Assembly: GCA_021613535.1 (NCBI GenBank)
Contig: CP075492.1
Span: forward strand, 15,252,001 to 15,316,000
Reading direction: 5' to 3'
Source of the DNA: Adineta vaga
Lineage: Eukaryota; Animalia; Rotifera
Length of the DNA: 64,000 nt
Shown here: piece by piece, positions 13,454-53,107 of the stretch
How the letters are laid out: the number at the start of each line of letters is the position of its first letter
How positions within the stretch are numbered: position 1 is the stretch's first letter
Notes under the pieces: generated by a model
The model's input: the letters and a program-made list of their open reading frames with translations, nothing else
Databases searched by the model: none
Told to the model about the DNA's origin: nothing
Made by a program: the position numbers and the translations under genes

Positions 13454-14443
13454 AGAATACATTTCTCGATTTTTTGGAGCTGATCAACCGTTAAATTTTG
13501 GCATTTTTTTATGATCCAAATAACATCCTATGTATTTCTCCAAATTTTGAGGAATTACTGATGTTTTATCGCCGACTACTTGATCTTGATTAGGGGATGC
13601 TGTTTTCATAGTTTTATCTATTCAAAACTAACCTGGTAGACATATTTACTCGAAATAGTATCATTGTAGTTGAAATTATATCGATCAAAGTGTAGTTAGG
13701 AAGAGTTTGAGAAGATACCTATCGTGGTGCCTCACTCGTATGTAGTCTACCCGTTAGAAAATCGCAGAATATCTTTAAAGATTTCAACCGATGAATCTAA
13801 TTTGATGTTCCAGTTAGAAGAAGCACATCAAGTTGCACTAGAAAATCACCAAATAGAATAGAGAAAACGCATTCCGCACAATAAAGACCCATGACATCGA
13901 AGATTAACCAATTCAACAACGATATAAATGTGCAGGCGATGGTAAGTTTCTTCATGAGTTACTATGATATAATTCGACGACGAACGTGAATTTTTCAAAG
14001 TTTACGGATTAGCCAATATTTGGTGTCATGAGTCTAAATTTTAGGAAAAGATTTTCTAGTGCAACTTGATGCGCTTCTCCTAACTGTATCATTAGATTGG
14101 ATTCAGCGCGTCGAATAACCAAAGAATGCTGTAGCTTTCCAGATAAGAGCTCACATAACAGTTAATTACCACGACAGGTATCTTCTCAAACTCTTCCTAA
14201 CTACACTTTGATCGATATAATTTCAACTACAATGATACTATTTCGAGTAAATATGTCTACCAGGTTAGTTTTGAATAGATAAAACTATGAAAACAGCATC
14301 TCCTAATCAAGATCAAGTAGTCGGCGATAAAACATCAGTAATTCCTCAAAATTTGGAGAAATACATAGGATGTTATTTGGATCATAAAAAAATGCCAAAA
14401 TTTAACGGTTGATCAGCTCCAAAAAATCGAGAAATGTATTCTT
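13454..14443. mobile_element. Foldback/MITE-like element with long inverted arms
   Basis: 13454-13728 is a near-perfect reverse complement of 14168-14443 (two mismatches seen by eye). A further paired block 13811-13847 / 14050-14086 extends the arms inward. No coding capacity. Confidence 0.8.
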
Positions 14444-14764
14444 CGTGTAGGAGATTATAATTTTTATACACCCTATATAATATAACAAAGTCTTTTCAAG
14501 ATTATTGATCAGTATATTGAGTTGATATCAATAATCAAGTTGAGAGTTAAGCGAGTCAGCCTCGCTGAGTATTTTTTACCAATCGGTACGCATATCAACT
14601 TTCAATCAAATTTTGTAATCTCGACTTTATCGAGTGCTGAAAAACGAAGCCCGGTCTATAGCAGATTGGACTTATTTTTTCTGTAAAGGATAGGTCAAAC
14701 GATTTTCTAGTTTATATTTTGTATGAGCGCGAACACAAGACAATATCAGATCATAGGAGTTTGT

Positions 14765-23273: not shown

Positions 23274-24829
23274 ATGAATATTATTATTTTTTTATGGGTA
23301 TTTACTTCTATCGTCCTGATGGTTGTTTTCATGGTGTACTGGTTATTAGTGCGACCTGAAAAGCGCTCCTATAATGCATTACATTCTCAAGGTGTGCCTG
23401 GGGAACCATATGTACCTATCATTGGTCAACTGCTCGAAATTAATCGTGCTCGAGTCAAGGATGATACATGATTTATTATGAAGAACTGGCGCGAAAACAT
23501 GGACCTGTTTTTCTGATGGGCTTCGGTCCATTGACACGTCTTGTCGTTCTCGAACCTAATTTGCTCGCCGATATTCTTGGTCGATCATATGCTCACTATT
23601 ATAAGAAAGCAAACTTCACCGCAACTGTGTTCAAATCAATAATCGGCACTCACAATCTTCTTGTAAGTGAAGGAGAAAAACATGAGCGAGCTCGAAAGAT
23701 GCTGAATCCAAGTTTTCATTTTGCCAATCTTCAATCGATGGTGTCTGTCATGATTGATCAGACGAGAAAGATGATCGACGAACTTTTTGTGATGAGCGAC
23801 CATCGATCTGTTGATTTGCAGACAGAATTCAGTGCATTGACATTGGCGATTATCGCTTCGTGTGCCTTTGGCAAAGGCTTTGAAACCATTCACAATGCCA
23901 AAGATATTGTGAAACGGACATTCACTGTCGTGCTGGAAGCGATTGAATATCGGACGATGTGTATGATCAACCAACTTCCTTTCTTAGCAGAAATGCCTTT
24001 CTGGCGCAAGCGAATCGTCGATAAAGGTGCTGAAGAAGTAGCGCGTTTTGTTGAGCAGATTATTGCTGATCGTCGACATGGTCGTTCGCAAAGTTTATGC
24101 TCGGGATGTGATATTCTAGACCTACTTCTATCAGCAGTCGATGCGCATGGTCAACCGTTCACCGATGAAGAAGTTAAAGAAGAAGCTCTTACTTTTGTAC
24201 TAGCCGGCCATGAGACAACCGCAAATCTTTTAGCTTGGGCTTTGTACGTATTAATGACCAACGAGCAAGTGATGCGTGCATGTTGCGATGAAATCGATCA
24301 TGTGCTTCCCGATGGTATTGAGCCCACTTCTGAAAACATCAGTAATCTGCCGGTATGCGAAGCTGTCTTGCAAGAAACTCTGCGTCTCTATCCACCAGCA
24401 CCATTTTTCGCACGAAATTGCATACGTGAACATACTATCGGTAGCGAAGGTGGGTATCGATTGCGTATCCCAGTAAACACGACTATTTTCGTCAATACTT
24501 ATGTTCTCCATCGAAGATCCGAATTCTGGTCTCGACCACTTGAGTTTGATTATACTCGTTGGATGCGGGATCCTATCACTGGTCAAAAACCAAAGTTAGC
24601 TCATCCTTTTTGTTATTTACCATTCGCTGCTGGGCCACGCAATTGCATTGGAAAGAATTTTGCATTGCTTGAAGGCAAAGTTTTATTAGCGATGTTATTG
24701 AAACGATGTCTTTTCGAACTTGAACCAGGGCAAACAGTGACACCTGATATGCGCATTGCCATGCGACCTAAATACGGTTTGCGGGCACGAGTCAGCAAAC
24801 GACAGGCTGCTATGTCTACTGAAGATTAA
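23274..24829 (+). CDS. Cytochrome P450 (intronless, one frameshift at ~23465)
   Basis: N-terminal TM helix and GVPGEP hinge in ORF 23274-23471, continuing in ORF 23468-24829 with AGHETT, ETLR and FAAGPRNCIG. The frame change at GATGATACATGATT cannot be explained by an intron. Confidence 0.9.
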
Positions 24830-26533: not shown

Positions 26534-27904
26534 TTATGTAGTATCACTCGACTTGCCCAAAAGAATTCGCGCCCGAATGGCTGCCGCGGCTCGCCCACCA
26601 GTTAAAAAAGCACCATGAACACATCCATTTGCCGATTCATTGATATCATCGTTGACGTACGTGTGTTCACCGGCCCAATGCAATCGACCATCGTCTGTCT
26701 CTCTAGCCAATAATTCCATAGTGTGCTGATTCGAATGTACTGCAAAGTTTGAATAAGAACCGAACGACAGAGGATCTTGAGACCATCGAGTAAATTTGTA
26801 CTTGATCGGATCTGGTACGACATATTGAGGAAAAATTTGTTGAAGAAACTTCATTACATGTGAAAGTATCTCACTATCCGCGGCATTCTCCAGTTCAGCG
26901 GCGTTAGCACCTGATAGTAGAAGAATGAGTATATTGGCAGGTGGTGGGAGACATACAATATAATGAAAGCGACTTCGAGGTTCATTGCATGTACGCAATA
27001 CAGTTATTGCCATTAAATTCCAGAAACAATCGGAGAATTGTAGAATACATTTATTTAATAAACCAAAACCCATACGACCAATGGCCTCACGTTTCCATTC
27101 AGGCAATGGAGGTTCAAATGCAATAGTCTCTCGTTTTAAACGCCAAGTGGAACAGTTATAAGAACGTATCGACAGAATATCGGTGAATCAACGTCTGCTA
27201 CTTTAACGGCTATTTGATCGGAATTACGAGTATCAATATGTGTCACGAGTGTATTCAGTCGAATGGCTAATTTATATTGATCAACGATGCGTTCGAGAAG
27301 GGTTCCATAACCATATGATACCCATTGATCACACCTAGCACTTTCTTGAGGAGTTCTCCATTCTTTAGCCGAGAGTTCGGCAAGATCTGACGCTTCATAC
27401 ATTTCTATGTCAGCGAGACAACAATCTATAATCGATTTGAGATGCCCATGAGTATCAGCTAGTTGTTCATAATCCGCCTGAATCACATCTTGGATGCTTC
27501 GATCGTTTAGTTCCTCAGTATCAGAAGCAAATTTCTCTAAGCATGTAATAAAGTGCTTATATATCATATCGGCTTGCTGTTCGGAGTCAGGAGACAGTGG
27601 TTTTCCATCATGACTAAGATTGAGCAAATGTTCTTCTTCGTCATTTTCCGAAATAGCCTGTGTCACTGCTTTGAATTGTTGATAATAGGGATACATTGGA
27701 TTATGGAATCCATACTGATGAATCCAACTGGCGCCAAGATCGACAGGAGTTGGTGCGAACGTTTCACTATCCGTATGCTCGGCCACCAGGACGATTCCGT
27801 GCCTCTAGCACGATAAATGACAATGACGTCTTCTGTAACTCAATAGCTGCCGCAATACCTGCTGCACCTGCGCCAACAATGATAACATCGAAGTCGGCAA
27901 TCAT
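26534..27904 (-). CDS. Flavin-containing amine oxidase (polyamine oxidase/MAO/LSD1-like catalytic domain); intronless, two frameshifts
   Basis: ATG at 27904: MIADFDVIIVGAGAAGIAAA...LEARNRPGGRA (GxGxxG and GG motif), then DLGASWIH, ITVPLGV, NKCILQF, TRWSQDPLSFGSYS, WAGEHT and VHGAFLTG. Frame changes at ~27775 and ~27137. Confidence 0.88.
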
Positions 27905-29125: not shown

Positions 29126-32100
29126 TTACAATTTCGTTCGTGAACTTTCTTTGATTAGTTTCTGAACCACTGATGGATCGATAAGCGTTGATGTATCTCC
29201 AATATTAGCAATATCCGGCTCAACAATCTTGCGCAATATTCGTCTCATGATTTTACCGCTCCGTGTTTTAGGTAAGTTAGATGCAAAATGAATAATATCA
29301 GGAATAACATGTGCGCCAATGCTTTCACGGACGACTACCACAAGTTCTTTCTTGAGTTCATCTGTTTCTGGTATATTGTCTTTGAGCGTAACAAAACAAT
29401 ACATACCTTGATTCTTTATAGGATCCTATTTTTCAAAAAGAAAATATAGTATTCATCATTTAGCATTAGAAAGTAGTGTGGGTAGCAGACTTAAGTTGCG
29501 CTCATCTACCCCGTACCTCGGCCCAATCATCTAGTAAACAATTATGATACTGCAACTATTAGAAAGCTTACCGGATATCCTACAACAGCTGCTTCTGAGA
29601 CGGCCCGATGCGATACAAGAGCTGATTCGACTTCTGCCGTGCCAATATTGTGCCCGGAGATTATGAGAACATCGTCCTACATTACATATGTTTTTAGAAA
29701 TTATGACAGTCGAACACTCACCACTCGACCCGTGATCCAATGATATCCATTTTCTTTTATTTCACAACCATCTCCAGTAAAATAAAACCCTGGATACCGT
29801 GTGAAGTAAACATCAACAAAACGTTTATGATCACCAAATATAGTGCGCGCTTGGCCTGGCCACGATTCACGTATGCATAACTCCCCCATACATGGCGGTT
29901 TCAGTGGAGCTTGTGTTTTGGGATCAAAAATCTGTGTTTGAGTGCCGAAAAACGGTAGTGTAATCGAGCCTGGCACCAGTTCTGTGACGTTCGAAATTGG
30001 TGCTATCATGAGGCCACCTGTTTCTGTCTGTAATGAACTCAAGTGAAAGATACTTAAAAAACAAGAACTTACTTGAAACCAAGTATCAACAATAAAGCAT
30101 CGTTTGTCGCCTAGAAAACAAAACAGGTTAATTTATCCGATTGCGGCACATTGTAAAAATCAACTGTAGAACACAAAACGTTTCCTAGCTTTCTCAACAT
30201 CTATATGCCCTCAAGAGTTTTAGACCACGTGATAAATTCTAAAAAAGGATTTTCAGTTGAAAGGTTTATAGAAACAATAGTATCTTATAATAGCTAGGGT
30301 TTATTACCATGAAAACCAGTGAGAAAGATTTTTTGCTTAACGGATAAGATTATCTTAAATATAAATGGCTTACGTTGGATTCCGTAATCTACGATCAAGA
30401 GCTTTCTGATTCACAGTTATGCATCTATCACTGTAAAAAATATCGTTCCAAGGGTCGTTGAAGAAAAGGGTATTTGTAAAAGTTTATTATTCGACGCCCA
30501 TTGTTTACAATAAATATAGAATAACCATGTTAGAAATATATATATATATATATATATGTTTAATGAACGCGGTCAGAGAGATTTCTTGAGGATAAAGTTA
30601 GTTACGTTTCGACTCTTGCTGAGTTTATTTCTTCCTCAAATTTTAAGATCAAGATATTGAGCTGAAAATTTAACCACACCCTTCCTACACCAGCTATAAC
30701 ATTTGTTCCCAGTTTCAGCTCATCTGAGCATACTGCTGGGCTGAGATTCAGTTTTGAGAGAGTGAGTGACCTTTCGCGCACATGACTTCAAATCTCTCAT
30801 AATTTCTGGATCTCATGAGCTATTTTATAGCTTTCCTAGGGTTATTCGAGGATTATTCTTTTAAGTTTCTTAAGCATACATAACGATGGCAGCTCGAATG
30901 TTACTCTAAGCCAGACATGAAGAGATCAGAAGACCTATTGCAATAGCTCCATAAGAGTTATGTGAGCGACTCTGAACAGCCTTCAAAAAAGTAATAAAAA
31001 CTGTCTCTCGATATTTTTTGAAAAGTTTTGAAGACCACCTATATTCATGGGAGCTGAAATGGATGTTCAACTTCAACACACGTAAACAAAGCCGATCATT
31101 AAGTTCGAGTTATGCGAGCTGAACAATAGCTGTCCTATTCTTACTTACCAACGACATTATGATACCAGCGCCATGCTTCTGGATTTATGGGTTCTCCGAT
31201 AGTTCCTAAAAGTCGAAGAGATTTTCGACTTGTGCATGTGACAAAAGAGTCGCTGTGAGCCATGAGTGAGCGGATAACTGTGGGTGCCGTATAGAATATG
31301 TTAACTTTGTGCTTATCGACAATTTGCCAAAAGCGCGATGCATCAGGATAGGAAGGAGTGCCTTCGAAGATAAGACTTGTAGCTCGATTGACTAGCGGTC
31401 CATACACGACATCTATTTTAATCGCACAATTTTATATTTTACCACTAGAATAGATTGAGAAGGAAAAGTTGCTTACATGAATGGCCTGTAATCCAACCAA
31501 TGTCGGCCGTACACATATATACTTCGTCAGGTTTGTAAGAGAAGATATATTTGAATGTAAGACTAACATGCGTTAGGTAGCCGCCAGTCGTGTGAAGAAT
31601 GCCTTTGGGCTTGCCTGTAGAACCACTTGTGTAGAGCTAAAACCAAAAAACAATGAATATTCTTCATTACTTTTTTTTCTGATTACTATGAACATTGAAT
31701 CTTCAGCCTTCATCGGCTCAGGTTGACACATTCATCATCGACTAGATTCATTTCTGCGTACATGCAAAAATCACGTCCATCAATCCATGCCATCGAATCG
31801 GACTGGATAAAGTCATTTAATCCATCGCTCGCGAAATATTTTCGTTGAAAGATAAACACTGTTTGAACAACAGAACACCTTTTATCGTTCAATGCTTCAT
31901 CGACTTTATGCTTCAGCACATGGCATTTACCACCACGAGTGCTAACATCACTAGTAATAACGACTTTTGCCTGCGAATCAACAATTCGTTCAGCTAAGTT
32001 TTTACTACTAAAAGCAGCAAACACAACTGAATGAACAGCGCCAATTCTGGTACAGGCAAGAAGAGCAATAACCACTTCAGCCACCATCGGCATGTAAATA

Positions 32101-32630
32101 ACAACCCGATCACCCTTTCTAACATCATGCTTCTTGAGTACATTAGCAACTTTTTTGACTTGATGCAGTAGTTGACCATACGTTATATTTTTAAACTTTG
32201 CTGTTGGTATGTCAGACTCGAAAATAAGTGCAATTTGTTGTGCTGCAGTCGGATCTCGTTCAATATGTCTGTCCAAGCAATTGTAGCACACATTTAAAAC
32301 GCCATCTTGGAACCATTTGATATCGACACCATGCGATGAACGGTAATCGAATTCGTAATCCTTGATTTTTGTTGGTGGTTGATACCAAGTTAAACGATCT
32401 GCTGCCATTTTCCAAAATCGATCGGGATCTTTAATTGACAAATTATACAGAAGTTGATATTCATCGAACGATGAGATTACATCGGGTAGTTGTACCAAAT
32501 CAGATGAAGATGAGTCAGTTGAAGCGGTAACAACTGGCGAATACTCCACTTCTGTTTTATTAGATGACAAAGGAGTATCTGAAGATATCATTGGAATAAC
32601 ACTAATACTGGCCGCACTTGACAATGACAT
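29126..32630 (-). CDS. acs: Acetyl-CoA synthetase (AMP-forming), about 7 exons, one frameshift at ~31725
   Basis: [84 protein letters not shown] and [16 protein letters not shown] across GT-AG exons; one ~1-kb intron (~30111-31146). Confidence 0.93.
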
Positions 32631-34584: not shown

Positions 34585-36537
34585 ATGGAAAACACGTTAG
34601 GTATAATACTGACTGCTCTTTTCATACTTGGATGTTTTCTACTTCACAAAAGACATCGGCAGCAGCAATATTTCAAGAAACGTGGCATCGCAACGCCGCC
34701 GTTTGATTTATTATTCGGACATTTACTGACGATGTGGTCTGCAAAATCATCTGCTGATCAATTAAAAGAATGGACTCGAAAATACGGGAAAATATATGGA
34801 ATTTTTGCCGGTAGCTCACCTATTTACATTGTATCGGATGTTAATTTTCTCGAACAAGTTTTTATCAAACAATTTTCAAGTTTTTACAGTCATCAAACGG
34901 ATTTTTCTGAGCATGCTGTAGAAAAATCGAAGCGTGGTCTCTTAATTGCTAGTGGAAATCAGTGGCGAAGGCAGAAGCAAATTATTGGACCGATCATATC
35001 TACAGGTATAAAGCAAATGAGCCCACTGTTTGATAAGTGCGTCGATGAAATGATACATTCGCTGGAGTCATTAAATAGCAACATACAAGAAGAGTTTAAT
35101 ATATATCCATTATACAAGAAAACATTCTGGAATATGGCATGTAAGTTCTTTGGATGTGAGAAGGGCTTTTACAATTGACATGTTTCTTATCTTTTAGGTG
35201 GCTCATTTGGTATCGATGTTGTAGTAGAAGAAAATGCGACGAATAAGCTTTTCAATGAATTTGAGAAATTTTTCATGACGGACACTAAAAGTTATCCATT
35301 GCTGAGAGCATCAGAGCTATTCCCTTCCTTTGGAACTATTTTTCTTTACTTGTTCGAGATGTATAACGAAATAGGTCGTTTATTCCGTGATATTATTTGG
35401 CCAAAGGCATGGGGTCCGATTTGGGAAGGGTATGCTCTTTATCGCGTCAAACATCAGCTGTTTTCACTCTTTAACAAGCGCTGGCGGATCCCACATAATG
35501 AACACAATATTCAGGGACAAAAACAAGATTTTCTTACAATGATGAGTGCAACATTAACTTTCGATTCAATCGAAGTAGGATGTTATCTTTAAAACTCCAT
35601 CTATTTCTACCTAAAACAGCATGAAGATCCTCATAGAAGGTGTATATTAATAATCAATCTGCGTCCGCAAGTACAGCAATTACTTAATTAAGGGTGAGAT
35701 GCATCTTGAGGGTGTGGGTGTGGGTCTGAAACTATTGGCAAGTTTGAACTTTTGAAATAAATTCTATTTCTTCATCTTTCACGAACCGAGTTTCACTTCT
35801 TTGCGTATAGGATGAGAACAATGTCGCTGGCGGACAATCACATCAACCACGACCGATTAATGCTCATGAGATTATTGACAACGCATTTCTTTTCATGGGG
35901 GCTCAGTATGCTGGAAACGCGGCAGTAATGGCCTGTTGTTCTTACATACTGGCTACTAATTGTGATATACAGAATAAACTTGTATCTGAAATTAATCAAT
36001 TTGCTTCGTCCGCAGACCAGGACAAGCTCAATGGTGATATTGTCTCACAGATGCCTTATTTAGATATGTTCATACGTGAAATTCTTCGCATGTACCCACT
36101 TTCCACATTAGGCATCGATCGACAATGCATGAGAGACACTATAGTTAACGGCATCCATGTGTCTAAAGGTAATTATGCCACAATTTTAGTTGGAATTTGA
36201 TGTCTTCTTTTTTCTGATAGGTTCTGTAGTTCAAGCCGATGTATATTCAATTCATTATGATCCTGATATATGGGGACCTGAAGATCCGGAGATTTTCTGC
36301 CCAGAACGTCATCTAACCGAAAACCGACATCCTCTTGCTCTCTTATTCTTCGGCGCTGGACCAAGAATGTGTCCAGGCGTTCGATTGGCTCTCATTACTG
36401 CGAAAGTCGTTCTAGTCCGTCTTCTTCAACACTACAATATTGTTGCCTGTGAAAGTCAAGAGAAAACGCTGGGTCTCGAAGAAAAAGTTATTCATCTACC
36501 AACTGAATCATGGGTAAAGTTGGTTCCGAGAAAATAA
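34585..36537 (+). CDS. Cytochrome P450 (CYP3-clan-like) with atypical I-helix; exons 34585-35140, 35198-35574, 35811-36168, 36221-36537
   Basis: All three GT-AG junctions keep the frame. N-terminal TM, WRRQK, EILR, PERH and FGAGPRMCPG heme motif are present. The I-helix reads FLFMGAQYAGNAA. Confidence 0.92.
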
Positions 36538-39979: not shown

Positions 39980-42900
39980 TTATATGTGTTCTTGTGTGGA
40001 AAAGGCGCAGTTGTCATCTGTTTTGGAGTTTAGACGTAACTTGGCTGGTGATCCAATCCAGTTGGTATGCATTGCCAAATAATCATTTGTCATTAAATAT
40101 GTTAAGGGAAATATTTGATTATTCCCTTCTAATTTGCAACCGCGATGAATTAAAACATATGGCATTATAATCGTTCCAGATCCAATTGATATAGGCGATA
40201 AATGAATTTTTCGTTTTTCATATGTATGTGCCTAAGTGATATAGAGGAGAAATGTTACAATATATACTTAAATATCTTGGTCGTTATCCAAAATGATTTA
40301 AACTATCGATGATAGATTTCTATTGTCTCATTGGACTTAATAATAATAACTTTTTTTAATAATCTTGTTAATAAGAGATCGTTAGAAAGTATTTTTAATT
40401 TTCAGATTTGATGAACAACTAAAACAAGCGTCTAAATTTAACAACGTTGAAATAATGTTCAGATTTAAGTATATTTTGCATTTGTCTCCAACAAATAACC
40501 AAAGCGCGCCGCCATGAACATCTCCAATAGTCACTGTGCTTTTTATACCATTCGATTCTAGATTTCGTGCTGAATTTTATTTGAACGAAATGCCGAGGCT
40601 TAGAATCTATTTTTATGTTTGTTATTCATAGTGAGAGAAAAAGCTTTCCTGCGGCAGTAATGTTAAATACGAAATTGAAATACTTGCAGTTTCAAATATT
40701 CAAATTTTCCACTCTCCGCACATCCACAATCAGCTGCTACAACCGTTGCACCCACACTCATGCCCGGACAAAGTCTTAAAACTAGTAACGGATCTCTGAA
40801 GAAACCGGACTTCCGTGCGCCGTCTGTAGTAGGTTGTTGGTGTCACCATGCGTTCCGAGGGAGTGCATATCGCTACCTACAACTTCCTCCATGACGCCTA
40901 CCAGAAGACGGGTACTTCGTATAATGAAAGTCTATCCGTAGAGGAAAGGGGTCGACCGAGAGCGATTCTAAAATTCTTTAGCTTCAAACTTACAATCATG
41001 TATTCTTGTTGGCAAAGTATATGTGAGTTCCACAAATTCTTTTAGCGCAATCCTTGTAGGATTAAAGATTTGATACTCGATAGAACTTGTTATATAAATA
41101 GCTAAGCTCACTAATACAGATATTAATGAATGCTAAACGATAAAATACCCATAACTACCCCACACCCATCTTCAATTTATATTTTTCAGGAACTTCTAAT
41201 TAAAAAATCAATCGGTTGTACATTGCGTCTGTGCTTTCGTACTCTTTCATTTAGGTAGTAACACTTTTATTGCTAATATTCAGAAAATATTGCTGATCTT
41301 GTCTTTGAGACTTGACTGTAATTTCTTCTCAACTATAAGAAGCATCAAATGAATATTTATGATTAAATCATTCTATTCATGGGACAAGATCATTTGGTTT
41401 TGTTATTACTGTATGTAGTCAAGAAAACCAAACAAATATAGAAATCTTTCTTCGATTCGATTCGATCTATTTCTAAAAAGTTATGAATATGTTCATTTTC
41501 GGTCTTTGATTCCACACTCACGTACAACCCTAGCTAGTTTCTGCTTCACTGACTCTCAAATCTGAAAATTTGAAACACGAACAAAAACACTACCTTTTGT
41601 TTCTGTGAAAAAATAATCTCTTAATGATTGGTAATTACACGCGTAGATAAGAAGAACTTACTTGAATACTAGCGGTACAATGAATTCGAACATTATTGTC
41701 GATTACAGTTAATTGTGGATCTGTTATTGTAAAAAAATCGTTAAGAATCACGTTATGACCAATTTTGGCGCCCATGATACGTAGAAGAATTATGAGCCAT
41801 TGCGTACCAGAGAAGAAATAATCAATTACATGTGTATGATATACGTTCATCGAAAATAGCTGGTTATAGCTATATGTATATTCACTATCGTTTTTACATA
41901 TATAACGACATTTTTCATCGTAAATACACACTAAAGCACAGTAGATGATGAAAGATAAGAATAAAAGCCAGTTCAATAATAGATAGTACATAGTATTGTA
42001 GTACGTCAATGATGAAAACCAGAGAAAGCTTACAGAACATAAGATTATGGGAACTATTACTGAAAGCAAATATCGTAATTGCACACGTGCCATAATCTTA
42101 CACACATTCCACCAGTATTTATAAGTTTTTGTTGTTAGCGATGATTGATACTGTGCTGGAGTATGCGTTAGAGATATCAATGGCACATTTGCTGCTGGTA
42201 TACCTAAGTAAAATTGATGGGGATTGTAGGCGTTGTTTACCGTATTTTCTAAAGATGTAATACGCGTTAAGCTACCGACAGTTGTTTGTGCTTTAATTGT
42301 TGCACCTTGATGTATTGTAACCATGTTACCAATGAAAACATTATCAGAAATTTGTATTTTATTGATCCGACACTCTTGCTCATGCGTTATTTCCATTGGT
42401 AATAGTAAATAGTCACAATTAACGGTAGCACCACTATCAATTTGTACAAGGTTACGTGAACCTGGTAAACCAAGGAAACCATCCGGGATAGTGATTCCAA
42501 TCTCTACATTTTCGCCGATCTTAGCACATAAATAATGATGATATTTCTTTGGTAAAATTGAAAAAGAATGAAATAATGAATTTGAAACCAAACTACGAAA
42601 CCATATGTTATGTAAGTATGCAAATGTATTCAATTTATACGTGGTGTCTGCTTTTAAGCTTCCAATTATAATAAAGAAGAGAAAAAGAGCAGCGCACATT
42701 GACACAAATAAGTAAACTATTAAACCAAATACGACGCCAATAGAAGTTTCAAATAAAGTTGATACTTGAGATCCAATATTAATTGACAATATATGTATTA
42801 AGAATATTATAATGATACACAAAAACTGATAAAGTTTGTGTTCAATTTTAAATTGTGTGAACTGGTCACTGCTCATTTTAGTGTTCACAGAGGATGATTC

Positions 42901-45900
42901 TCCATGTATTATATTTTGTCCATCGACAATACTATTTGGTGCAATTAATCCACTGACAGATGACATCGACTTAACTAGAACTTTTTCTTTGATGTCAACA
43001 CCACCGTAAAGTACAGATCTTGCCTCGATTGTACAATTATTATGTATTTTTATTTTATCCAATCGAAATGTTTGCTGTTGATAAAGTATATTGCATAGCA
43101 GCACTTCTTTTCCGATAAATACTGAATCACCCACGTCTATCAAGTCCGGAACAGTAATTGACGTTGTTAACAAATGAGTATTTTGTCCGATATGTGCACC
43201 ACACAGTCTTAAATAGGAATTATAAAATGATGTACCTGTTAATATACTTAAAATGTTCGTGTTTAAGGACCACAACCGTTGTAAAATCCACCAGCGATAA
43301 TACGCCCATGAAAATAATTGATATTCTCCTTGTTGCCTTTGGCTGTCAAAAGAAAATAGTAGCTTTTTGATAACGATATATTGTATCAAATGTACAGATG
43401 GTATTGATACAGACCAGAACGTAATATTTAGAATAAACACAGAGAAAGGATGTAACCGTATCAAACTTAAGATTGGTAATATATATACTGAAATTAGTAA
43501 AAGTACACTCAATGTTTCAATAACTAATGAAGGTTCCAATTTTTGAAACTGTTGTTCGTTCTTAAGAGAGAGAACACTTGCCTCTGTTACTGTTTTCGCT
43601 TTCTCAAACTTTGTATCGACTGCTACTAGCGTTTCCAAAACTCTAGCTAATTGTCGTACACTTGGGTTGGAGAACAACAGTTGAATATTCATGTCTGGAT
43701 AGAGACGTTTACGAATCAATGTTAGTGCTTTCATAGCATGTAATGATGATGCGCCCAGTGCAGAAAATGAGATGTCTACATTGATCTTATTTGCCATATC
43801 GGCAGAAATATCAAATGATTCGATGAATATTTTCAATAGCACTTGTTCGATAGCTGTATTTATCACAACATCACTATGTTTATCATCAAATCCAAGTGTT
43901 TCGTTGATAAGTAAAGATCTGGTAAGTGTTGGTAATTGTTTTCGATCTACTTTTCCATTTTGATTCAGTGGAAATTCCTTCATTAGAATAAAGAATGATG
44001 GTATCATGTAGACTGGTAAATGCTTTTGACAATGTGTTTTGATTTGTTTTTCGATTTCTTTTTTCCGTTTTTCCAAATCATCGTGGATAGTATGGATATA
44101 GGCCACAAGAAAATCTTGTTCCTTCGATTCGTGTGAAACTTTCATAACAAGACAATTGTGAATTGCTGCAATGCAAGGCGAATATGGTGAGCCGCTGGAC
44201 GATAGTTTCATAATGGTATTTTCTATTTCACCTAAATAAAAAGTAATTGGCGATTCATGTTTGGTAGGTGTTCATACGACACTTAGAACCAATTTTGGAA
44301 AAGATTCTAATAGTGTGAAGATGTAATTGAGTTTCAGAAATTGCCAACTACTGGGATTATTAAAGACAGTGGAGTTACTCAGTTGTGATAAGACTAGAGA
44401 ATCTTGAGAGTATGGTTCAAGATATATGTTCTTCATCCACACCCTTCAAAACTAAATCGAATTTTGAAGTACACCTCAGGTTTTCGTAGAAGTGAAAGAT
44501 TTTTGTATAAGAATATGCTTAGATTAAGCAGCTCTTGACAACAGATGGAACGTGAGTGCGAGTGTGACTAAGGGTGAGGATGAATAGGAGAGAGTATCAC
44601 CCACACTCGCAATGATCTTCTGACCTTTTCAAAAAAACCTCGCTAATAATGAATTCAATTATTGCCTTCTTACCTGTTTCTATTCGTTGTCCGCTTAATT
44701 TTACTTGGAAATCTTTTCTTCCTACAAACTCAATTGTACCCCATTTGTTAATTTTAACCAAATCACCACTTCTATAAAATTTCTGTTCATCAACGATACC
44801 AGGTAGTTCTTTCATAACTTCTTCAGTTAAATTTGGACGATTTAAATAACCTTGAAACATTCCTCCAAAACTTCCAATATAAAGTTCTCCAACTTGACCA
44901 ACACTTACAAACTGTAAATAATTGTCCAATATATAACACTGGTAGTTTTTTACAGGAGAACCAATAGGAATCGCTAGTTCATATTTGTTAATATCGTGTC
45001 TATAAATGGTAAGGTTTGTGGTAACAATTGAGCATTCAGCTGGACCATATTGATTAATTATTTTGGAATTTAAAGAGAGATTTTGTAATAAAGAGAAAAT
45101 CAATGATGGTTTTGAGACATCTCCTATCAAATGAAAAACACATACTTGTATTAAATTTCAACTAATCTATATTTTATAAAAAACCAAGATGTCTAAAAAG
45201 TATTCTTTGACAATCCTTTCTTTGAATCTAGCAATGCATCTAGAAGGTTTTGCGTACGTATCAAATCGTTGCAATGACCTCGGTCACATTATTTCGTTTG
45301 TTTAGAGTCGAGAGTTCATCACAATCTATAAAAATGTAGGATCTATCTATCTATCCACTGGGAAGACTAAAACCAACTAGTGCAGTACTGTTATTACATT
45401 TATTTCGCTTTTCCTTTCTACACTCTGTATTGACAGCTTCGAATATTTAGAGTTTAAGAATAAGTAAAAACACATACCACCGGTCAATATTACTCTAATG
45501 GTATCCATTTTGTGGAATAATTGATTCTCTTCTAAATACGAATAGATAAGCTGCATTAGCGATGGGAGCAAGATAACAAATGTAACATTATGTTTGGCAA
45601 TTATGTCAGTAAAATATCTCAGATCTTTATTTCCATTCGGCTTTATCGCCACGACTGTGCAGCCCAAAAGTAATGTACCCGCTATTTCAGACATATGATA
45701 ATCGAAACTACAAGCTGTTGATTGCATTACAAGATCATAGCTGCTATTAGTCTGATCAGCAAGAGTTGATTTGATGTAACAGAGAAAATTTTCATGCGAA
45801 AATGTCGCCTAAAACAACTTGTAAGCAATTACAACCTAAGTAGAATTCAAAACTAATTGGTACGTACGATTTTTGGTGTCCCTGTGGAGCCGGAAGTAAA

Positions 45901-48900
45901 TAAATAATAAGCTATGTTCGAAGTTGAAACTGAATCTTCATGAGTGTATCGAGTTGTTGGTTCGTTAAATCGTTGTCATGACCAAGATGAAAACTGTTTT
46001 CAATATTGATACTTACGAAGTCGTTTTTATGTTGAAATTTCAAACTTGTTAGTGAATGATATATTATCAACTTTGGCTGTACTTCATTAGTCAACAAACT
46101 AATTCGTTCCCAAGGATCATTTGGATTTAATGGACAATAGACAGCACCTGCAGCTAAGATCGATAAAATTCCTACAATCATTTCTATAGATCTGTCAACA
46201 AACAGACAAATTACATCTTTAGGTTTGATATAGCGCTCATGAATTAAATACGATGCTATGTGTTGTACATAATACATTAATTCAGAATATGTTAGCGATT
46301 GTTCATCTAATACAACAGCTAGCTTCTGTGAATATTGACTGGCACGATCAAAAAACTCTTCATGTATTGGTTTTAACGGATGATCTGCGCTGACATCTGC
46401 ATATGTGTCATTAAGTCTCTTTATCATTTGTACTTCTTTTGGTAGTAGAATTGACAGTTCATAAACTGGTTGTTTATCTCGTTGAAAATTTGAATAAGAA
46501 TAAAAAAGCTGTTCTAGAAGAATATGAAATCGATCTGCCATCGTATGAATAGTTTCTTGTTCAAATAAATCTGTGGCACATGTGAACGATACTGTCATTT
46601 GTTTTTGATCCGGAACGTAATCTATCCTTAACAGCAAGTCACACTTTGCCACTATGTTGGTTATATCGGAGGTTATGGGCGTGAACCAGTTCTGCGTTTA
46701 TGCAGGTGGGATACTTCAACTTGAATACAAGTTTGCAACAAGTTGCTTATCAAATCACTTGGCATGGCTTTTTGACTATTCAAATGAATAAGTTGTTGGT
46801 GAGGAAAATGTGTATGTGGTAGTATCTCAAAGCATAGTTGTTGAACATATTTTAACTGTTGCTCCAATGATAGCGAAGGATCCATCTCGAAGTAGTATGG
46901 TATTGTGTTTACGAACATTCCAATTAATGATTGCAACACAAGATTGTAACGATTTGCGCTAAGACTTGTAATACGTATTCTTCGATTATTACTTCCCGTT
47001 AGTTTAAACAGATAGATATAATAAATCGTTAGATACAAGTGAAATAGGGTCGCTTGCTTTTGAGTAGCATAATTTGTTATTTTATCAACAAGTGATGTAT
47101 CTAAACTAAACTGCACTGTAAAACCTTTACCGTTTCGAGATTGGTTTAACTGTTCTTTAAAATCATATGGCAAATCTATTCGATGAAGCATTTCGTCGTC
47201 AAGATACCATCGATCCAATGTTTTTTTCCAATATTCTTTTGCATTATACATATCAATACTACGTTCATACTCTGAATAGTCTATATATTGTAGAGGCAAT
47301 GGAGGTAGACATTGATCACTTTCGTAAGCCAGACACAGGTCATCCAGGAATATCTTTATTGAACTTCCATCAAATGCAATGTGATGAAAGAAAAATACAA
47401 TTTTATCATTAACATTTAGTAGAGTATCAACACATCCTGCCATTTGACTAATGTGACTATCCAAAGTATGACAACGAATAATATGACAATGAAGAAGAAT
47501 CCCTTCTTCCAAAGAAAGTAACGATGCATTGATTTGTTCATTCAGAACAATTTCTCGAAATTCTTCTTCATGTGAAACAAATGTAATGTTGAATGAATAA
47601 AGCAACTGCTTTTCGTTATCTGACGTTGATGTAATGTATTGTTTTAGACAGTCTTCATTACCATCATATTTAATTGATGTTCTCAAAATACTGTGTTTTC
47701 TTACAACCTTACTGACAGCTCGCTGAAGACGATTTAGTGAGATGCCGCTTTTTGAAACTTTTAATAAGAGTAATTCATTGTAAATTGCAGTTTGACCATT
47801 GAATCGAACTTTTGTATCGAACCATATTCTTTCTTGAGCATACGATGCTCTAGCTATAAATATAACGAATAAGAGATAATGATCAGAAATGTCCGAATAG
47901 ATTTATTTCACTGGCGAAGAAGACTAGGTCATATATTATTCAGATTGTGGAAACAGCAAATTCTGTAGGCTTAAATATTTGATATGCTGTAAGAAACGCG
48001 ACATATATATATATATATATATATACCACTTCTTTTTCTGAGGATCAGAATATGTTCCTGACACATATACCTAAGACGTCACCGATGCACTATTGGATTG
48101 CAGTCTCTTCAGCTTCCAGCGTTTCTATTCTTCGCATGTCAGACAATAAAGTTTAGACATAATCACTTAAGGTTACCAGTATCAATCTATAGACTCCTTT
48201 GTTTTTCTCATCGTCAACTTTATGTTACCCATCTAAGAGTCAAAAAATGAGAAAAGAAATTATAATGCAATGCTTAAAAAACTGAACAAGGTTCATAATT
48301 CGAGCCATTTTTTGACAGAAAACGTCTTTGATCAGAAAGAGAACGTATCGAGATAATTTCTTCCTACTTCTAATATGCACTATCAAATTGTCTGGACTTA
48401 TATCGGATACTTCCATTAGTGTCGTCATAAAGAGAATGTTATACGCACATTGACTACAGAAAACTTGTATGGTGACTGTTAATATTGATACAAAAGAACA
48501 ATCATATTAATGTCTTTAGGTAAGCAAGTTAATATACAATATTTTTAGTGTAAAAATGTGCTGAATAGCTTTTGTTTTACGTACTGAATAAGAAAATTAT
48601 TGAATGCTGTATAAACATGAAGTGTGCAATATTTGATTTGCATATATTATCTCATACATAGGCGTTAAACTGCGCGACAGCTATGCATGACGTTCCATAT
48701 TAATAACTATAGGATCCTGTATGGATACGAGGTGATAATTATACTATTTCAAAATAATCTTAATTTATGTTTGTAATAGTTCAAGAATAATTGGTAATAT
48801 TCTTTGTCTCTTTACTACTAGATTCTAATAGTTGTTTGCATAGTTCTTGTCAAATCTGTTTCAATTCTGTAACTCATACTATGTTTTATTGCTATGTCTA

Positions 48901-51900
48901 AAATGGACGAACTCGTATCATACTTCATTTACCTTCGATTAAGTTTAAAGGTTTCCATACTAATTGATAATTTTTAAATTCTGAAATATCGTTGAAGCCA
49001 TCATACTTGCTCGAATAATCGCTTGATGCTTTCGTAGTATTGCTCTCTTGTGATTCATTCGCATCTTCTAGTAGAATGTATGCTCGTAGTTATAGAATCA
49101 GTGTTTCTTGATTGATTTAGTAGATGAGAATAAATATGTTCAGCTACATTTTTGATTGATTTACCTTGCAAGAGTGTGGTTACTGGAATGCGAGTGGAGT
49201 ACTTAAGACACAATGACTGAGCAAGTGACATGGCTGTAAGTGAATCTAACCCTTGTGCCATCAGCGATCTGTCTGTATCAATTACTCCTAATATATTTGA
49301 TAAAGTGAATAATTTCTCTACCATGGAGTGAACATCCTTGGTAATTTTTTCAATATCAATACTTAACATAAGCTGATCATTCGATTTAATGTCATTTCGA
49401 AGCGATATAATAGTCGTAGTTCGGTAATCATACACTTTTCGATTATCAAATGCATAATAAGGCATCTGATTTAGTCGGCAAAGAATCGTTTGATCATTAG
49501 AACTCGCATTCCAAGAGCGAGTGCGCAAGAATTTTGACCAGTTGATGTTTGGTAGACGACATAATGATGAAAGAATTGTTTGTTGTTCATTTTCTTTTCG
49601 TTTAAGAGAGTGTATGATCAATGGCACTGAATCACATTTCAAATAGTCCATACATTCTTGAATAGAGCTAACTAACACGGGGTGTGGTGATATTTCTAAG
49701 AATACATGTGTAGTGTAAAGACGCTCGTGCAAAATAGTTTGTATAGTCTGGCTGAACATTGCGGTATTTCTTAAATTTTTCCACCAATAGCTACAATCGA
49801 AGCATAAATTTTTACATTCGCCAGTTACCGTCGAGTATAATGTAGCATTTGCGCAAACTTTATCGAACCTATCATCTTCATGAATTTTATAATAATCGCC
49901 ATTAATACTGCTTAGAGATGTTAATAAATCTTGATAAATATTAAAGTTATCCATTAAAGGACTATGTAATGCATTTTCGAGTCGTATCCACGTTTTAAAA
50001 ACGCTGGGCTTCGTTTTTGTTAGTAATTGGTGTAGTTGCTCGAGCTCTGTGCTAAAACCACTGTATGTCACTGAAGTAGGACTGTTGATAGCGGCAAATG
50101 AGACACGATGTTCAATTCCTTTGAGAAATGAACGTGCTTCTGTTTCGTTCAAACCCATAACTGCTAGCATGCGCCCGCCTTGACGTGTATTACGGTGCTG
50201 AAGACGTGAATAATGATATATTACTATGCATGCATCTTCCAGTGTTAATCGTCCACCAACGTAGGCTGCTGCTATCTCTCCAACTGAATGTCCGAGAATT
50301 ACTCGCGGATATATACCCCATGATAACCAAAGTGCAGTAAGTGCAACTTGCACAGCGAAGATTGCGGGTTGAGCAATGTTTGTTTCATTAATATGAGATG
50401 ATTTTTCGTTCTGCACATTAATAAGCTCCTCGATCAATGACCATTCAGTTGTTAATTTTTGAAGTTCTTTACTAATTTTATCAATCCATTTCCTAAATAC
50501 AGGTTCGGAATTGTATAGTTCTCGTCCCATTTTCCACCATTGCGGTCCTGTTCCACAATAAACAAAACATATATTTTGATGAACTTGGGATGCATGCGAT
50601 TGTTTGATTTGACAGAATACAGAACCAGGTGTACCATTAATATTGTTCGTATCAACGTGTGATAAGGAGACTGATATTTGGTTTTTGAATTCTTCATTAT
50701 TAGAAAAGATGAATGATGCTCGATGTGAAAAGTTTGTATTTCGTTTGAGTAATAATTTATAGCATAAGCCAGGGAGTATATGGTTTTGATTTTCTAAAAG
50801 CAACGATGAATACCATTTTGAAAAATTATTTAATTGACTAATTAACGATAGTTGACACTTAGCTAACAACAGACAAATTTATTAAAACAATAATAATATC
50901 ATTTAAAAAAAACAGATGGAAACTCACCGGAAATAACTGCAAGATAATATTGTTGCTGTTCCAATGTACTTGAATTATTTGCTTCTAAGCATTTAGATGA
51001 TATTTCCTTCTCTGAATGAGATTGAGAAAAACTGCCCCATTCCTCAATAATTGCATGAGAATTTTTGCCATTAATTCCAATTAGGGCCAACCGATTTTGT
51101 GGAAACATTGTTCGTTGATGTGCAATCTGTACGTTATATTTTTCAGATTTAGTTATCATATTATCATGTCCATAATTTCTTTGTGGTAGGATTATACGAT
51201 TTTTCATCGATAATGCAACATTAATTAAAGCTGCAGTACCCGCTGCACTACCAATATCGCCTATATTAGACTTGATTGTACCGAGCAAAAGAGGCACACT
51301 GGTTTCATTATGATGAAAAAATTCACCGATTGCATTGTTTTTGATAAGCTCATTATGTATTGTCCCACCATCAAGTTCTTCAATATAAAATATTTCAGAT
51401 AAGTCAATTTGATTTCTTGTAATATAAATTTCAGTCAATAGCTGCAGTTGAGCACTGTGGGATGCCATTGGAAAATCTTTCATAACTATGTCATTATCAC
51501 AGTGAAAAACTACATCACGAATAACACAATAAATTTGATCACAATCACGAATAGCATCCGATAATCGTTTTAACAGAATAAGTGCAACACCTTCACCTTT
51601 AATGAAAAGATAAGAATGGCAGAATACTTTCAATTTTCGTGGACTATAAGGATATAAACTATGCTTTATCTTACTTCACTTTGACAAAGTAGACTAAATT
51701 AGAAGTGTAAAGTCTTGTGCGGACTTTTTGTTTTGATTCGTACTTTAGAAATGCACCGCAAAATCTCAGGATTCTTTTATCGTCCACTAACAGAGTTCGA
51801 ATACTATATGTATGCATCTGTATGAAATAAGTAATTCAGAGCACTATAAAAAAAGACAAATCCAACATTGCATAAAGACGATGGAAAAAGCCATTTCTAT

Positions 51901-53107
51901 GCGACTAATTTAATATTGACTAAGACCTATGCCCTGTATTGGATTCCGAAACTCGTCTTCGACCCTGGTGGAATCGAAATCTAAGTATGCAAACAACTTT
52001 TTTTTTGAGTTCCAGTCGGAGGCGAGAATACTTTTTGCAATCTAACACAAAGTAACATAACTGAAGTAAGAAAATTTGTTTTTACTCTGGGACAATATCA
52101 ATATTATTTCTTGCATATGAACTGACTCTAAAATACTTGCACTAATGTCAGCTCGAGTTCTAGATCGTACTCCAAAGCTTATTATGATGGAATCGGAGCC
52201 GAAGTTAAACAATTTTTTTCGAGTTTTGAGTCGAAATAGAAACAAATTTTTCTTATCTAACCTAAAAAAAGTCTAATTATCGTCGTAAGATGAAATAATG
52301 GCTCACTAACTTAGCTTAGGAGCTCACTATTTGCGAATATCCTAATACAGTGGACTAGTATTGTAAAAAGAGCATTCCTAAAAAGAATATATTTATGTAC
52401 TTGCCTTTGGTGTACCCGTTTCGTCCCTCTGACGGTACCGGTTGAAGCTGCTTATCACATAACAATTGTTCATTTGTTTGCAGTACATTTGTACCACCAA
52501 TCACAGCATAATCAGCTTCACCAGTTCTAAGTGCTTGCACAGCCATAGAAAGTGACACCAAACTGGACGGATGCGTCGTATCAAGTGTCAAATTTGGTCC
52601 ACGTAGATTGAAATGATATGCTAAACGTATTGACGCACTGCAGTTATGCAGGTTTGATACCAAAGGAGCTGTGTCAGAATCAAATCCTTTTTCTGCAATT
52701 ATCAATGGACGTTTATCCGAAGTTTGTTCAATAAATACAGCGGTTTTTGTCCCATTAATTTGGTTAATCGTATAATTTGAATCCTCTAGCAAGTGAACAA
52801 ATTTTTCAAGTAAAATACGATCTGATGGATCTATTATTTGCGCTTCTTGATCGGAAATGCCAAAAAAATCTCGATCAAATTCATCCAATAGTTCTTTCTT
52901 CAAAAAATAACGATGTTGGGTCGATTCTTCACTCGAATTCAGACCAGTACTCAGCAACGGCACAGACTCTAATGACGAATCTGTTTGCTCTGTTTCCACT
53001 TCGCTTCCATGGTGAGCATTGGTTGCCATGAAACTCCATAATGCGTGTGGTGAATGAATGTCATTAGAAAATTCACACGAAATACCGATTAGAGCGATCC
53101 GATCCAT
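39980..53107 (-). CDS. Hybrid PKS-NRPS: KS(inactive)-AT-ACP-C-A-PCP-Pls/PosA-type transmembrane terminal domain
   Basis: Exons 53107-52405, 51596-50928, 50862-48933, 47853-45868, 45808-45478, 45123-44674, 44231-41662, 40231-39980. Motifs: KS IALIGISC, RGPNLTLDT, GEGVALILLKRL, KSNIG; AT GHSVG; ACP GLDSL; C ASYAQERIW and HHIAFDG; A FTSGSTGTPK, SFD, NQYGPAE, YRSGDL, GRKDFQVKLSGQRIETGEIE, NGKVDR; PCP LGASSL; three TM + GA(K/H)IG beta-helix repeats ending WIGSPAK. Three frameshifts (~49070, ~46690, ~45930). Confidence 0.9.

What the first reader, a model, noticed from the sequence alone, without database searches (positions are those of the whole stretch)
39980..43540. Pls/PosA-like terminal domain: three TM + left-handed beta-helix repeats replace the thioesterase
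Seen after the PCP: three similar units, each with hydrophobic helices then a hexapeptide-like stretch. They read YLRLCGAHIGQN...DLIDVGDSVFIG...IKIHNNCTIEARSVL; CAKIGENVEIG...IQISDNVFIGNMVTIHQGATI...YLGIPA; and LRIMGAKIGHN...IQ|AHTYEKRKIHLSPISIGSG...WIGSPAK. The last unit is completed only by splicing 41662 to 40231 across a 1.4-kb intron. Known: the Q-x-H-x-(F/Y)-E-x-R and W-x-G-x-P-A signatures are typical of the NRPS terminal domain of Pls-family enzymes. Inference: this domain performs chain elongation and release.
Basis: partly seen in the sequence, partly recalled or inferred. Interest (0 to 1): 0.8.

Follow-up and report, generated by a model that had tools for sequence, protein, structure and literature searches.

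The report
Rotifer PKS-NRPS with Pls-type membrane tail

Summary
On the minus strand, after the PCP, there are three helical hairpins (six TM helices, not three), each followed by a left-handed beta-helix.

- **Family match:** exon 1 matches TIGR02353 (Pls/PosA terminal domain) over profile 68-633 (E 6.5e-39). The 83-codon last exon matches 633-695 (E 2.8e-6).
- **Splice:** transcript-like contigs from two studies join 41662 to 40231 (1430-nt GT..AG intron). A DNA-like run covers the intron.
- **Fold:** an AlphaFold model (pLDDT 85) superposes over about 600 residues on predicted Pls/PosA models (TM 0.80-0.82).
- **Organism:** Adineta vaga. The public model UJR11638.1 wrongly splices out most of the domain.

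It is not a canonical member:
- It scores far below the curated cut-off (134 + 26 bits against 423).
- It belongs to a long-branched clade in which every named member is bdelloid. There are about 15 such loci in this genome, most sharing the intron position.
- It follows KS0-AT-ACP-C-A-PCP.
- Its A domain lacks the Glu239 found in all 22 canonical enzymes checked.

The Q-x-H-x-Y-E-x-R motif is kept, and dN/dS is about 0.2. I read the domain as an off-loading acyltransferase. Polymerisation is unsupported.

The scan noted paralogous loci in this genome before. A 2024 supplement labels one paralogue NRPS_term_dom without comment.

The parts
43639..43839 (-). PCP (thiolation) domain just upstream of the terminal domain (ORF residues 125-191)
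   Evidence: PF00550 E 2.9e-7
43384..43539 (-). TM hairpin 1 (TM1-TM2, ORF residues ~225-276)
   Evidence: Hydropathy. AF2 helices 25-48 and 55-81 of the model correspond to ORF 229-252 and 259-285.
42892..43338 (-). Soluble unit 1: two helices plus a left-handed beta-helix. The canonical W-x-G-S-P-A end is degenerate here.
   Evidence: TIGR02353 match starts at residue 292. PF00132 Hexapep at 387-419. Alignment A1. Beta-helix strands in the model.
42640..42846 (-). TM hairpin 2 (TM3-TM4, ORF residues ~456-524)
   Evidence: Hydropathy. AF2 helices 252-282 and 286-312.
42172..42594 (-). Soluble unit 2 (beta-helix), ending in L-G-I-P-A
   Evidence: Alignment A1. LbH hits at 589-653. Model strands.
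41911..42096 (-). TM hairpin 3 (TM5-TM6, ORF residues ~706-767)
   Evidence: Hydropathy. AF2 helices 493-530 and 536-570.
41662..41829 (-). Soluble unit 3, first part, ending in the Gln of the Q|x-H motif. End of exon.
   Evidence: TIGR02353 profile reaches 633 here. GT donor at 41661-41660.
40232..41661 (-). Phase-0 GT..AG intron of 1430 nt, single copy in the genome
   Evidence: Spliced out in contigs of X1, X4 and X9 and present in X7. Only a self-match in the genome. No Rfam hit. The same position holds 53-67 nt introns in six paralogues and a ~2.06 kb intron in A. ricciae.
39980..40231 (-). Last coding exon (83 codons plus stop). It completes unit 3, carries A-H-T-Y-E-K-R at its start and has W-I-G-S-P-A near its end.
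   Evidence: TIGR02353 profile 633-695, E 2.8e-6. The Rotaria socialis orthologue P0016 carries the joined form. dN/dS about 0.18 against A. ricciae.
44212..53107 (-). Upstream part of the same gene: KS0 - AT - ACP - C - A, in several exons. Junctions 45478|45124 and 44672|44229 are confirmed.
   Evidence: Pfam on the ORF pieces. Junctions from contigs and their loose ends. KS catalytic Cys/His/His read as His/Asp/Asp. Public model P0020 joins these parts.

Best explanation
The stretch encodes the C-terminal domain of an expressed hybrid PKS-NRPS of Adineta vaga, with the layout KS0-AT-ACP-C-A-PCP-terminal domain. The domain is a diverged homologue of the Pls/PosA polymerisation domain. Three TM hairpins anchor three tandem left-handed beta-helices, which pack as a pseudo-trimer on the same side of the membrane as the PCP. 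It takes the place of a thioesterase. Most likely it off-loads the PCP-bound N-acyl-aminoacyl thioester by transferring it to an amine (or hydroxyl) nucleophile. The His of the conserved Q-x-H-x-Y-E-x-R motif in unit 3 would act as general base, as in acyl-ACP-dependent LbH acyltransferases. Shown: homology, fold, topology pattern, splicing, transcription, purifying selection and position in the gene. Inferred: catalysis, the single-transfer mode and the nature of the acceptor.
For: HMM: TIGR02353 matches colinearly over 68-633 and 633-695. Fold: AF2 pLDDT 85, pTM 0.89. The whole domain superposes on predicted Pls/PosA-family models with TM 0.80-0.82 over 596-611 residues. Single units match LbH acetyltransferases, LpxA and LpxD. 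Six TM helices lie in three pairs, as described for Pls/PosA (PMC10522769). Transcript contigs from two studies show the splice and continuous coverage of the domain. The motif is invariant in 28 of 28 canonical relatives, and Q, H, Y, E and R are kept here. dN/dS against the A. ricciae orthologue is about 0.24 for exon 1 and about 0.18 for the last exon. Orthologues exist in A. ricciae and Rotaria socialis. No other release domain is present. Against polymerisation: the C domain is intact, the KS is inactive, and A-domain position 239 is Ser against Glu in 22 of 22 canonical enzymes. Other proteins of the clade also have C-A-T modules before the domain.
Against: There is no biochemical evidence for any member of this clade. 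The score is far below the curated cut-off, and only 30 of 68 near-invariant canonical positions are kept. Two Lys positions conserved in relatives are His and Thr here. The role of the His is inferred by analogy and not from a solved Pls structure, since none is in the PDB. The A-domain code was read by hand against the core motifs. My model of this protein lacks the last 83 residues, because the exons were not joined.
Confidence: 0.6

Rival explanations
1. It is a true Pls-like polymerase. The A-PCP pair loads the same amino acid repeatedly, and the terminal domain builds an isopeptide-linked oligomer, perhaps capped by the acyl starter.
For: It is homologous to the only characterised function of this domain (PMC10522769). 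The catalytic-looking motif is kept. Some clade members have Glu or Asp at A-domain position 239 (P0033, P0030, P0036).
Against: This gene's A domain has Ser at 239 and no acidic residue at the other code positions read by hand. The upstream C domain would block the alpha-amine. The domain is strongly diverged from canonical polymerases.
Confidence: 0.17
2. The domain has lost catalysis and serves only as a membrane anchor or export scaffold. Release is done by water or by a separate enzyme.
For: 38 of 68 canonical near-invariant positions are changed, unit 1 has lost its W-x-G-S-P-A end, and two conserved Lys are replaced.
Against: The H/E/R motif and the W-x-G-x-P-A end of unit 3 are kept. 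dN/dS is about 0.2 over soluble and TM parts alike. The motif is kept across the clade wherever the last exon is annotated.
Confidence: 0.12
3. It is an artefact: microbial contamination, a pseudogene, or a misjoined model.
For: The family is microbial. The public model of the gene differs from my reading.
Against: It lies on a 20-Mb chromosome-scale contig whose local GC (0.33-0.35) matches the surroundings. Spliceosomal introns are confirmed by transcript contigs. The frame is open for 850 + 83 codons. Orthologues occur in other bdelloid genera with the same intron. Transcript contigs run straight through both stretches that the public model removes (table 8).
Confidence: 0.02

Closest known systems
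Pls (epsilon-poly-L-lysine synthetase, Streptomyces albulus) and PosA (delta-poly-L-ornithine synthetase, Acinetobacter baumannii): terminal domain, TIGR02353
   Same: The domain follows a carrier domain. It has six TM helices in three pairs alternating with three ~180-residue LbH units (PMC10522769). The HMM match is colinear and the whole-domain predicted fold matches. The unit-3 Q-x-H-x-[FY]-E-x-R motif and the W-x-G-x-P-A end are kept.
   Different: The score is about 160 bits against a 423-bit cut-off. Identity to canonical members is 15-20% over the MAFFT alignment and 24-28% over locally matched stretches. The domain is preceded by KS0-AT-ACP-C-A-PCP rather than A-T alone, and its A domain lacks Glu239. 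Unit 1 lacks the G-S-P end. The domain is interrupted by a spliceosomal intron, and the host is an animal.
Eukaryotic canonical Pls-type synthetases: the fungal epsilon-PL synthetase of Epichloe festucae (PMC7179176), oomycete and basidiomycete homologues, and the two canonical A. vaga copies
   Same: They are eukaryote-encoded Pls-family enzymes. The canonical bdelloid copies (L001, L002; 508-513 bits) group with an Acaromyces-containing cluster and with Saprolegnia and Aphanomyces.
   Different: Those are A-T-terminal-domain proteins that pass the cut-off. Where I read the A domain (A. ricciae P0184, Acaromyces P0185 and Saprolegnia P0128), position 239 is Glu; the A. vaga copies' own A domains were not read. 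The window's domain lies in a separate long-branched clade. A common bdelloid origin of both clades is not rejected (AU p 0.41).
Trimeric LbH acyltransferases: LpxA/LpxD (acyl-ACP dependent) and maltose/galactoside O-acetyltransferases
   Same: Each unit has the left-handed beta-helix fold (Foldseek hits 3nz2, 4isx, 1ocx, LpxA, LpxD). The donor is a thioester on a phosphopantetheine arm. A His general base is the expected chemistry (established for LpxA/LpxD; applied here by inference).
   Different: Here three different units sit in one chain, with TM hairpins between them. Only unit 3 carries the His motif. The donor carrier is fused in cis.
Conventional NRPS/PKS release domains (TE, terminal reductase, terminal condensation)
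   Same: The position is the same: at the end of the assembly line, directly after the last carrier domain.
   Different: The fold is unrelated and the domain is membrane-embedded. No TE, R or CT signature is present in the gene.

Membership tests
Pls/PosA family NRPS terminal domain (NCBIfam TIGR02353, equivalog_domain) | HMM score at or above the curated cut-off (423.1 bits) | tested here: not met
   133.8 bits for exon 1 and 26 bits for the last exon. The exons were scored apart and never joined. The two canonical A. vaga loci score 508-513 bits.
Pls/PosA family NRPS terminal domain (NCBIfam TIGR02353, equivalog_domain) | Colinear match over the whole domain | tested here: met
   Profile 68-633 plus 633-695 of 695.
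Pls/PosA family NRPS terminal domain (NCBIfam TIGR02353, equivalog_domain) | Six TM helices in three pairs alternating with three tandem soluble units | tested here: met
   Hydropathy. AF2 helical hairpins at the same places. Literature description in PMC10522769.
Pls/PosA family NRPS terminal domain (NCBIfam TIGR02353, equivalog_domain) | Three LbH units packed as one pseudo-trimeric domain | tested here: met
   The AF2 model has pLDDT 85. TM 0.80-0.82 over ~600 residues to predicted Pls/PosA models. Single units match LbH enzymes. Both sides are predictions, because no solved Pls domain exists.
Pls/PosA family NRPS terminal domain (NCBIfam TIGR02353, equivalog_domain) | Invariant unit-3 motif Q-T-H-L-[FY]-E-D-R and W-x-G-x-P end | tested here: met
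   Q, H, Y, E, R and W, G, P are kept. T, L and D are replaced by A, T and K.
Pls/PosA-type homopoly(amino acid) synthetase (whole enzyme) | Single-module A-T-terminal domain architecture without a C domain | tested here: not met
   KS0-AT-ACP-C-A-PCP precedes the domain.
Pls/PosA-type homopoly(amino acid) synthetase (whole enzyme) | A domain suited to a diamino acid (acidic residue at position 239) | tested here: not met
   22 of 22 canonical enzymes read F-D-x-x-x-E-E. The window reads F-D-Y-H-M-S-E. Positions were assigned by hand against core motifs A4/A5.
Pls/PosA-type homopoly(amino acid) synthetase (whole enzyme) | Iterative isopeptide polymerisation activity | not testable with these tools
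   Needs biochemistry or product analysis.
Soluble hexapeptide-repeat acyltransferases (PF00132; WcaF, maltose acetyltransferase type) | One LbH per chain forming a homotrimer, with no TM segments | tested here: not met
   Three tandem units with six TM helices lie in one chain. The best HMM by far is TIGR02353 (E 6.5e-39) against WcaF-family (1.9e-15).

The most novel reading that the evidence does not exclude
The divergent clade, in which every named member is bdelloid, would be a new class of assembly-line off-loading domain. A membrane-embedded LbH pseudo-trimer would release multi-module NRPS and PKS-NRPS products by conjugating them to an amine or lipid acceptor at the membrane, perhaps coupled to export. 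That would give an animal a family of about 15 synthetases for acylated or cationic peptides, possibly used in its defence against fungi.
Probability: 0.35. Interest if true: 0.8.

Novelty: new variant of a known kind. Interest (0 to 1): 0.6.

Why it matters
How Pls-type domains work is still poorly understood. No structure is solved, and only single-module homopolymer synthetases have been characterised. Here the domain ends multi-module assembly lines whose chemistry cannot be simple homopolymerisation, so it would broaden the known ways of releasing NRPS/PKS products.

It also bears on what bdelloid rotifers make with their horizontally acquired synthetases, which are induced by fungal attack (PMC11258130). 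A practical point follows as well. The public gene model removes two thirds of the domain and misses the true last exon, so proteome-based surveys will overlook it.

Tried and rejected
- **PDB sequence search:** the domain gave no hits. A canonical relative matched only soluble LbH proteins. No Pls terminal domain is solved, so a comparison with an experimental Pls structure was impossible.
- **Foldseek against PDB:** it matches only single LbH units.
- **AU test:** under the PMSF mixture model it did not finish in four runs. A smaller LG+G4 test did not reject one origin for all rotifer copies (p 0.41). So "two separate acquisitions" is not shown, and no donor lineage can be named.
- **Long intron:** I found no Rfam family and no second genomic copy. 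There are only short AT-rich inverted repeats near its ends, which may be chance.
- **Literature:** searches for rotifer with polylysine synthetase, Pls-like or NAPAA found nothing relevant. The two bdelloid and animal NRPS papers do not mention the domain in their text.
- **2024 supplement:** a supplementary GFF of PMC11258130 does label NRPS_term_dom at a paralogous Chrom_1 locus. The held file is cut, so I could not check this locus.
- The exons were searched apart by reference. The complete domain was modelled only for the Rotaria orthologue P0016.
- **Rejected readings:** contamination and pseudogene were considered and rejected.
Full report
**What is there**

The minus strand between about 53107 and 39980 carries one large intron-bearing gene. 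Pfam on the ORF pieces gives this order:
- KS (52355-53107 and 50899-51633)
- AT and ACP (49055-50869)
- C (46673-47686, with an intact HHxxxDG)
- A (45912-46652, 45377-45727, 44597-45130 and the start of 41635-44211)
- PCP

About 720 further residues follow. The finding concerns these.

**Family match**

The 858-aa ORF matches NCBIfam TIGR02353 (Pls/PosA family terminal domain) at E 6.5e-39 and 133.8 bits. The match covers residues 292-851 against profile positions 68-633 of 695. The next-best LbH families are at 1e-15 or worse. The frame beginning at 40231 matches the same profile at positions 633-695 (E 2.8e-6), exactly where exon 1 stops. The curated cut-off is 423.1 bits, so this is a clear homologue but not an equivalog.

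**Splice and expression**

The intron 40232..41661 is phase 0, with GT and AG at its ends.
- Contigs of runs X1 and X4 (one study) and X9 (another study) join 40230/1 to 41661/2 and skip 1430 nt. They have no coverage of this intron, nor of a second one at 44230-44671.
- Run X7 has depth near 100 and covers the introns, as genomic DNA would.
- The three runs are labelled RNA only by guess, but this pattern is what transcripts give.
- Their contigs run uninterrupted through 41661-44229.
- A loose end placed a further junction at 45478|45124.
- The annotated Rotaria socialis orthologue P0016 carries the joined reading (...V-I-Q-A-H-T-Y-E-K-R...W-I-G-S-P-A-R) in one protein.

**Organism and public annotation**

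NCBI protein UJR11638.1 (Adineta vaga, 1681 aa, on a 20.35-Mb contig) is 100% identical to ORF residues 1-207. It then skips residues 208-555 and 670-830, and it ends in sequence read from the intron instead of the true last exon. The transcript contigs contradict both skipped stretches (table 8). The A. ricciae orthologue P0001 is also annotated only up to the intron. The domain is therefore hidden in the public proteomes.

**Anatomy**

Hydropathy gives six TM-like helices in three pairs. This matches the published description of Pls/PosA: six TM helices in three pairs and three LbH units of about 180 residues packed with approximate three-fold symmetry (PMC10522769).

An AlphaFold2 model of the exon-1 part (646 aa, 57-row alignment) has mean pLDDT 85 and pTM 0.89. 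It shows three long helical hairpins, each followed by beta-helix strands. A model of the complete domain of the Rotaria orthologue has pLDDT 82.9.

Structural comparisons gave two results:
- Against the ESM Atlas, the window's model superposes on predicted Actinomycetota "Pls/PosA family" proteins at TM 0.80-0.82 over 596-611 residues.
- Against the PDB, only single LbH units match. These are maltose/galactoside-type acetyltransferases (TMt about 0.56), LpxA, LpxD and serine acetyltransferase.

No Pls terminal domain has been solved.

**Conservation**

In 28 canonical relatives the unit-3 motif Q-T-H-L-[FY]-E-D-R is invariant (D in 27 of 28), and the W and G of W-x-G-x-P are invariant (P in 27 of 28). 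The window keeps Q, H, Y, E, R and W, G, P. Units 1 and 2 have no such His in either group, so a single active site is likely. That is an inference.

Overall 30 of 68 near-invariant canonical positions are kept. Against the A. ricciae orthologue (58% identity) the values are:

| Part | dN | dS | Ratio |
|---|---|---|---|
| Exon 1 | 0.29 | 1.18 | about 0.24 |
| Last exon | 0.21 | 1.13 | about 0.18 |

dS is close to saturation.

**Relatives**

An exhaustive phmmer search of 1.84 billion representatives gave 1161 hits at E 1e-3 or better.
- The top 35 or so (150-816 bits, one long stretch) are bdelloid wherever they carry a name: Adineta ricciae, A. steineri, A. vaga, Rotaria socialis, R. magnacalcarata, R. 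sp. and Didymodactylos carnosus.
- They are followed by canonical proteins of about 1300 aa at 142 bits or less and 24-28% identity.

The A. vaga genome holds about 15 divergent loci and two canonical intronless copies that pass the cut-off (508-513 bits).

Trees were built with FastTree (149 rows) and IQ-TREE PMSF (55 rows).
- The divergent sequences form one clade (100, stem 0.95-1.49 changes per site). The window, A. ricciae and R. socialis form an orthologue group within it.
- The canonical bdelloid copies group with a cluster holding the fungus Acaromyces and with the oomycetes Saprolegnia and Aphanomyces.
- A single origin of all rotifer copies is not rejected (AU p 0.41), so I cannot name a donor.

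Six A. vaga paralogues have the same phase-0 intron between the Gln and x-H-x-F-E-x-R, but of only 53-67 nt. The A. ricciae orthologue has about 2.06 kb there, apparently with a GC donor. The family therefore expanded inside bdelloids after the intron was gained.

**Mechanism**

Canonical enzymes are A-T-terminal domain. All 22 that I checked have Glu at A-domain position 239, the residue expected to hold a side-chain amine.

This gene differs in three ways:
- It has Ser at position 239, and the hand-read code D-Y-S-I-L-G-Q-I-V-K has no acidic pocket residue.
- An intact C domain sits upstream.
- The KS has His, Asp and Asp in place of the catalytic Cys, His and His. The first module is therefore a loading module.

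The PCP should thus carry an N-acyl-aminoacyl thioester, which cannot polymerise in the Pls manner. Other clade members also place C-A-T modules, up to three of them, before the domain. Some add a methyltransferase after it.

The best-supported reading is a membrane-bound off-loading acyltransferase that passes the chain to an amine or hydroxyl acceptor. The acceptor is unknown.

Neighbouring genes are two P450s, a flavin amine oxidase and an acetyl-CoA-synthetase-like gene. P450s also follow the A. ricciae orthologue. This suggests a biosynthetic cluster.

**Novelty**

Bdelloid NRPS/PKS genes are known (PMC11258130, PMC10531068), but their texts do not mention this domain. A supplementary GFF of the 2024 paper labels NRPS_term_dom at a paralogous Chrom_1 locus without comment. 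The held copy is cut, so this locus could not be checked. The scan itself has noted paralogous loci of this genome before. I rate it a new variant of a known kind.

Noticed in passing
G000:C1:11882475-11884550 (+) and G000:C1:880858-882927 (-), loci L001 and L002: A. vaga has two canonical, intronless Pls/PosA terminal domains above the curated cut-off (512.7 and 508.4 bits). They group with fungal (Acaromyces cluster) and oomycete (Saprolegnia, Aphanomyces) enzymes. The A. ricciae counterpart P0184 is A-T-terminal domain with Glu239. An animal may therefore make a cationic homopoly(amino acid).
   Followed up: partly
window 39980-44211 (-), public protein UJR11638.1 (P0020): The public gene model removes ORF residues 208-555 and 670-830 as false introns. 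It replaces the true last exon with sequence read from the intron. Transcript contigs contradict it.
   Followed up: yes
window 23468-24829 (+), 34585-36537 (+), 26534-27786 (-), ~31710-32630 (-): Two cytochrome P450 genes, a flavin amine oxidase and an acetyl-CoA-synthetase-like gene lie next to the synthetase. Two P450s also follow the A. ricciae orthologue (L013). This may be a conserved biosynthetic cluster.
   Followed up: partly
window 40232-41661; L013 ~12548-14603: The intron at the Q|x-H motif is 1430 nt here and about 2.06 kb in A. ricciae, where the donor reads GC. In six A. vaga paralogues it is 53-67 nt. It is single copy, with no Rfam hit. There are 19-23 nt AT-rich inverted repeats near its ends (40389-40411 / 41556-41578), which may be chance.
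   Followed up: partly
window 52355-53107 and 50899-51633 (-): The ketosynthase reads D-T-T-H-P-S-S where D-T-A-C-S-S-S is expected, and has Asp at both catalytic His positions. It is a non-condensing KS that is neither Cys nor Gln type, at the head of the gene.
   Followed up: partly
proteins P0160 / P0203 (ENA metagenome, unnamed; 2837 and 3596 aa): An unnamed PKS (AT - flavin monooxygenase-like - DH - ACP) carries a Pls-like stretch followed by a terminal reductase domain. So Pls-like domains inside larger assembly lines also exist outside the named bdelloid sequences.
   Followed up: no
protein P0156 (EukProt, Pyxidicula operculata transcriptome): A 646-aa Pls-like sequence from a testate-amoeba transcriptome is the weakly supported nearest neighbour of the bdelloid divergent clade. 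It has a long branch, so its placement is unsure. It could belong to the amoeba or to prey or contaminant.
   Followed up: no
proteins P0007, P0168 (Adineta steineri): In one subclade the Pls-type domain is followed by a SAM-dependent methyltransferase domain.
   Followed up: no
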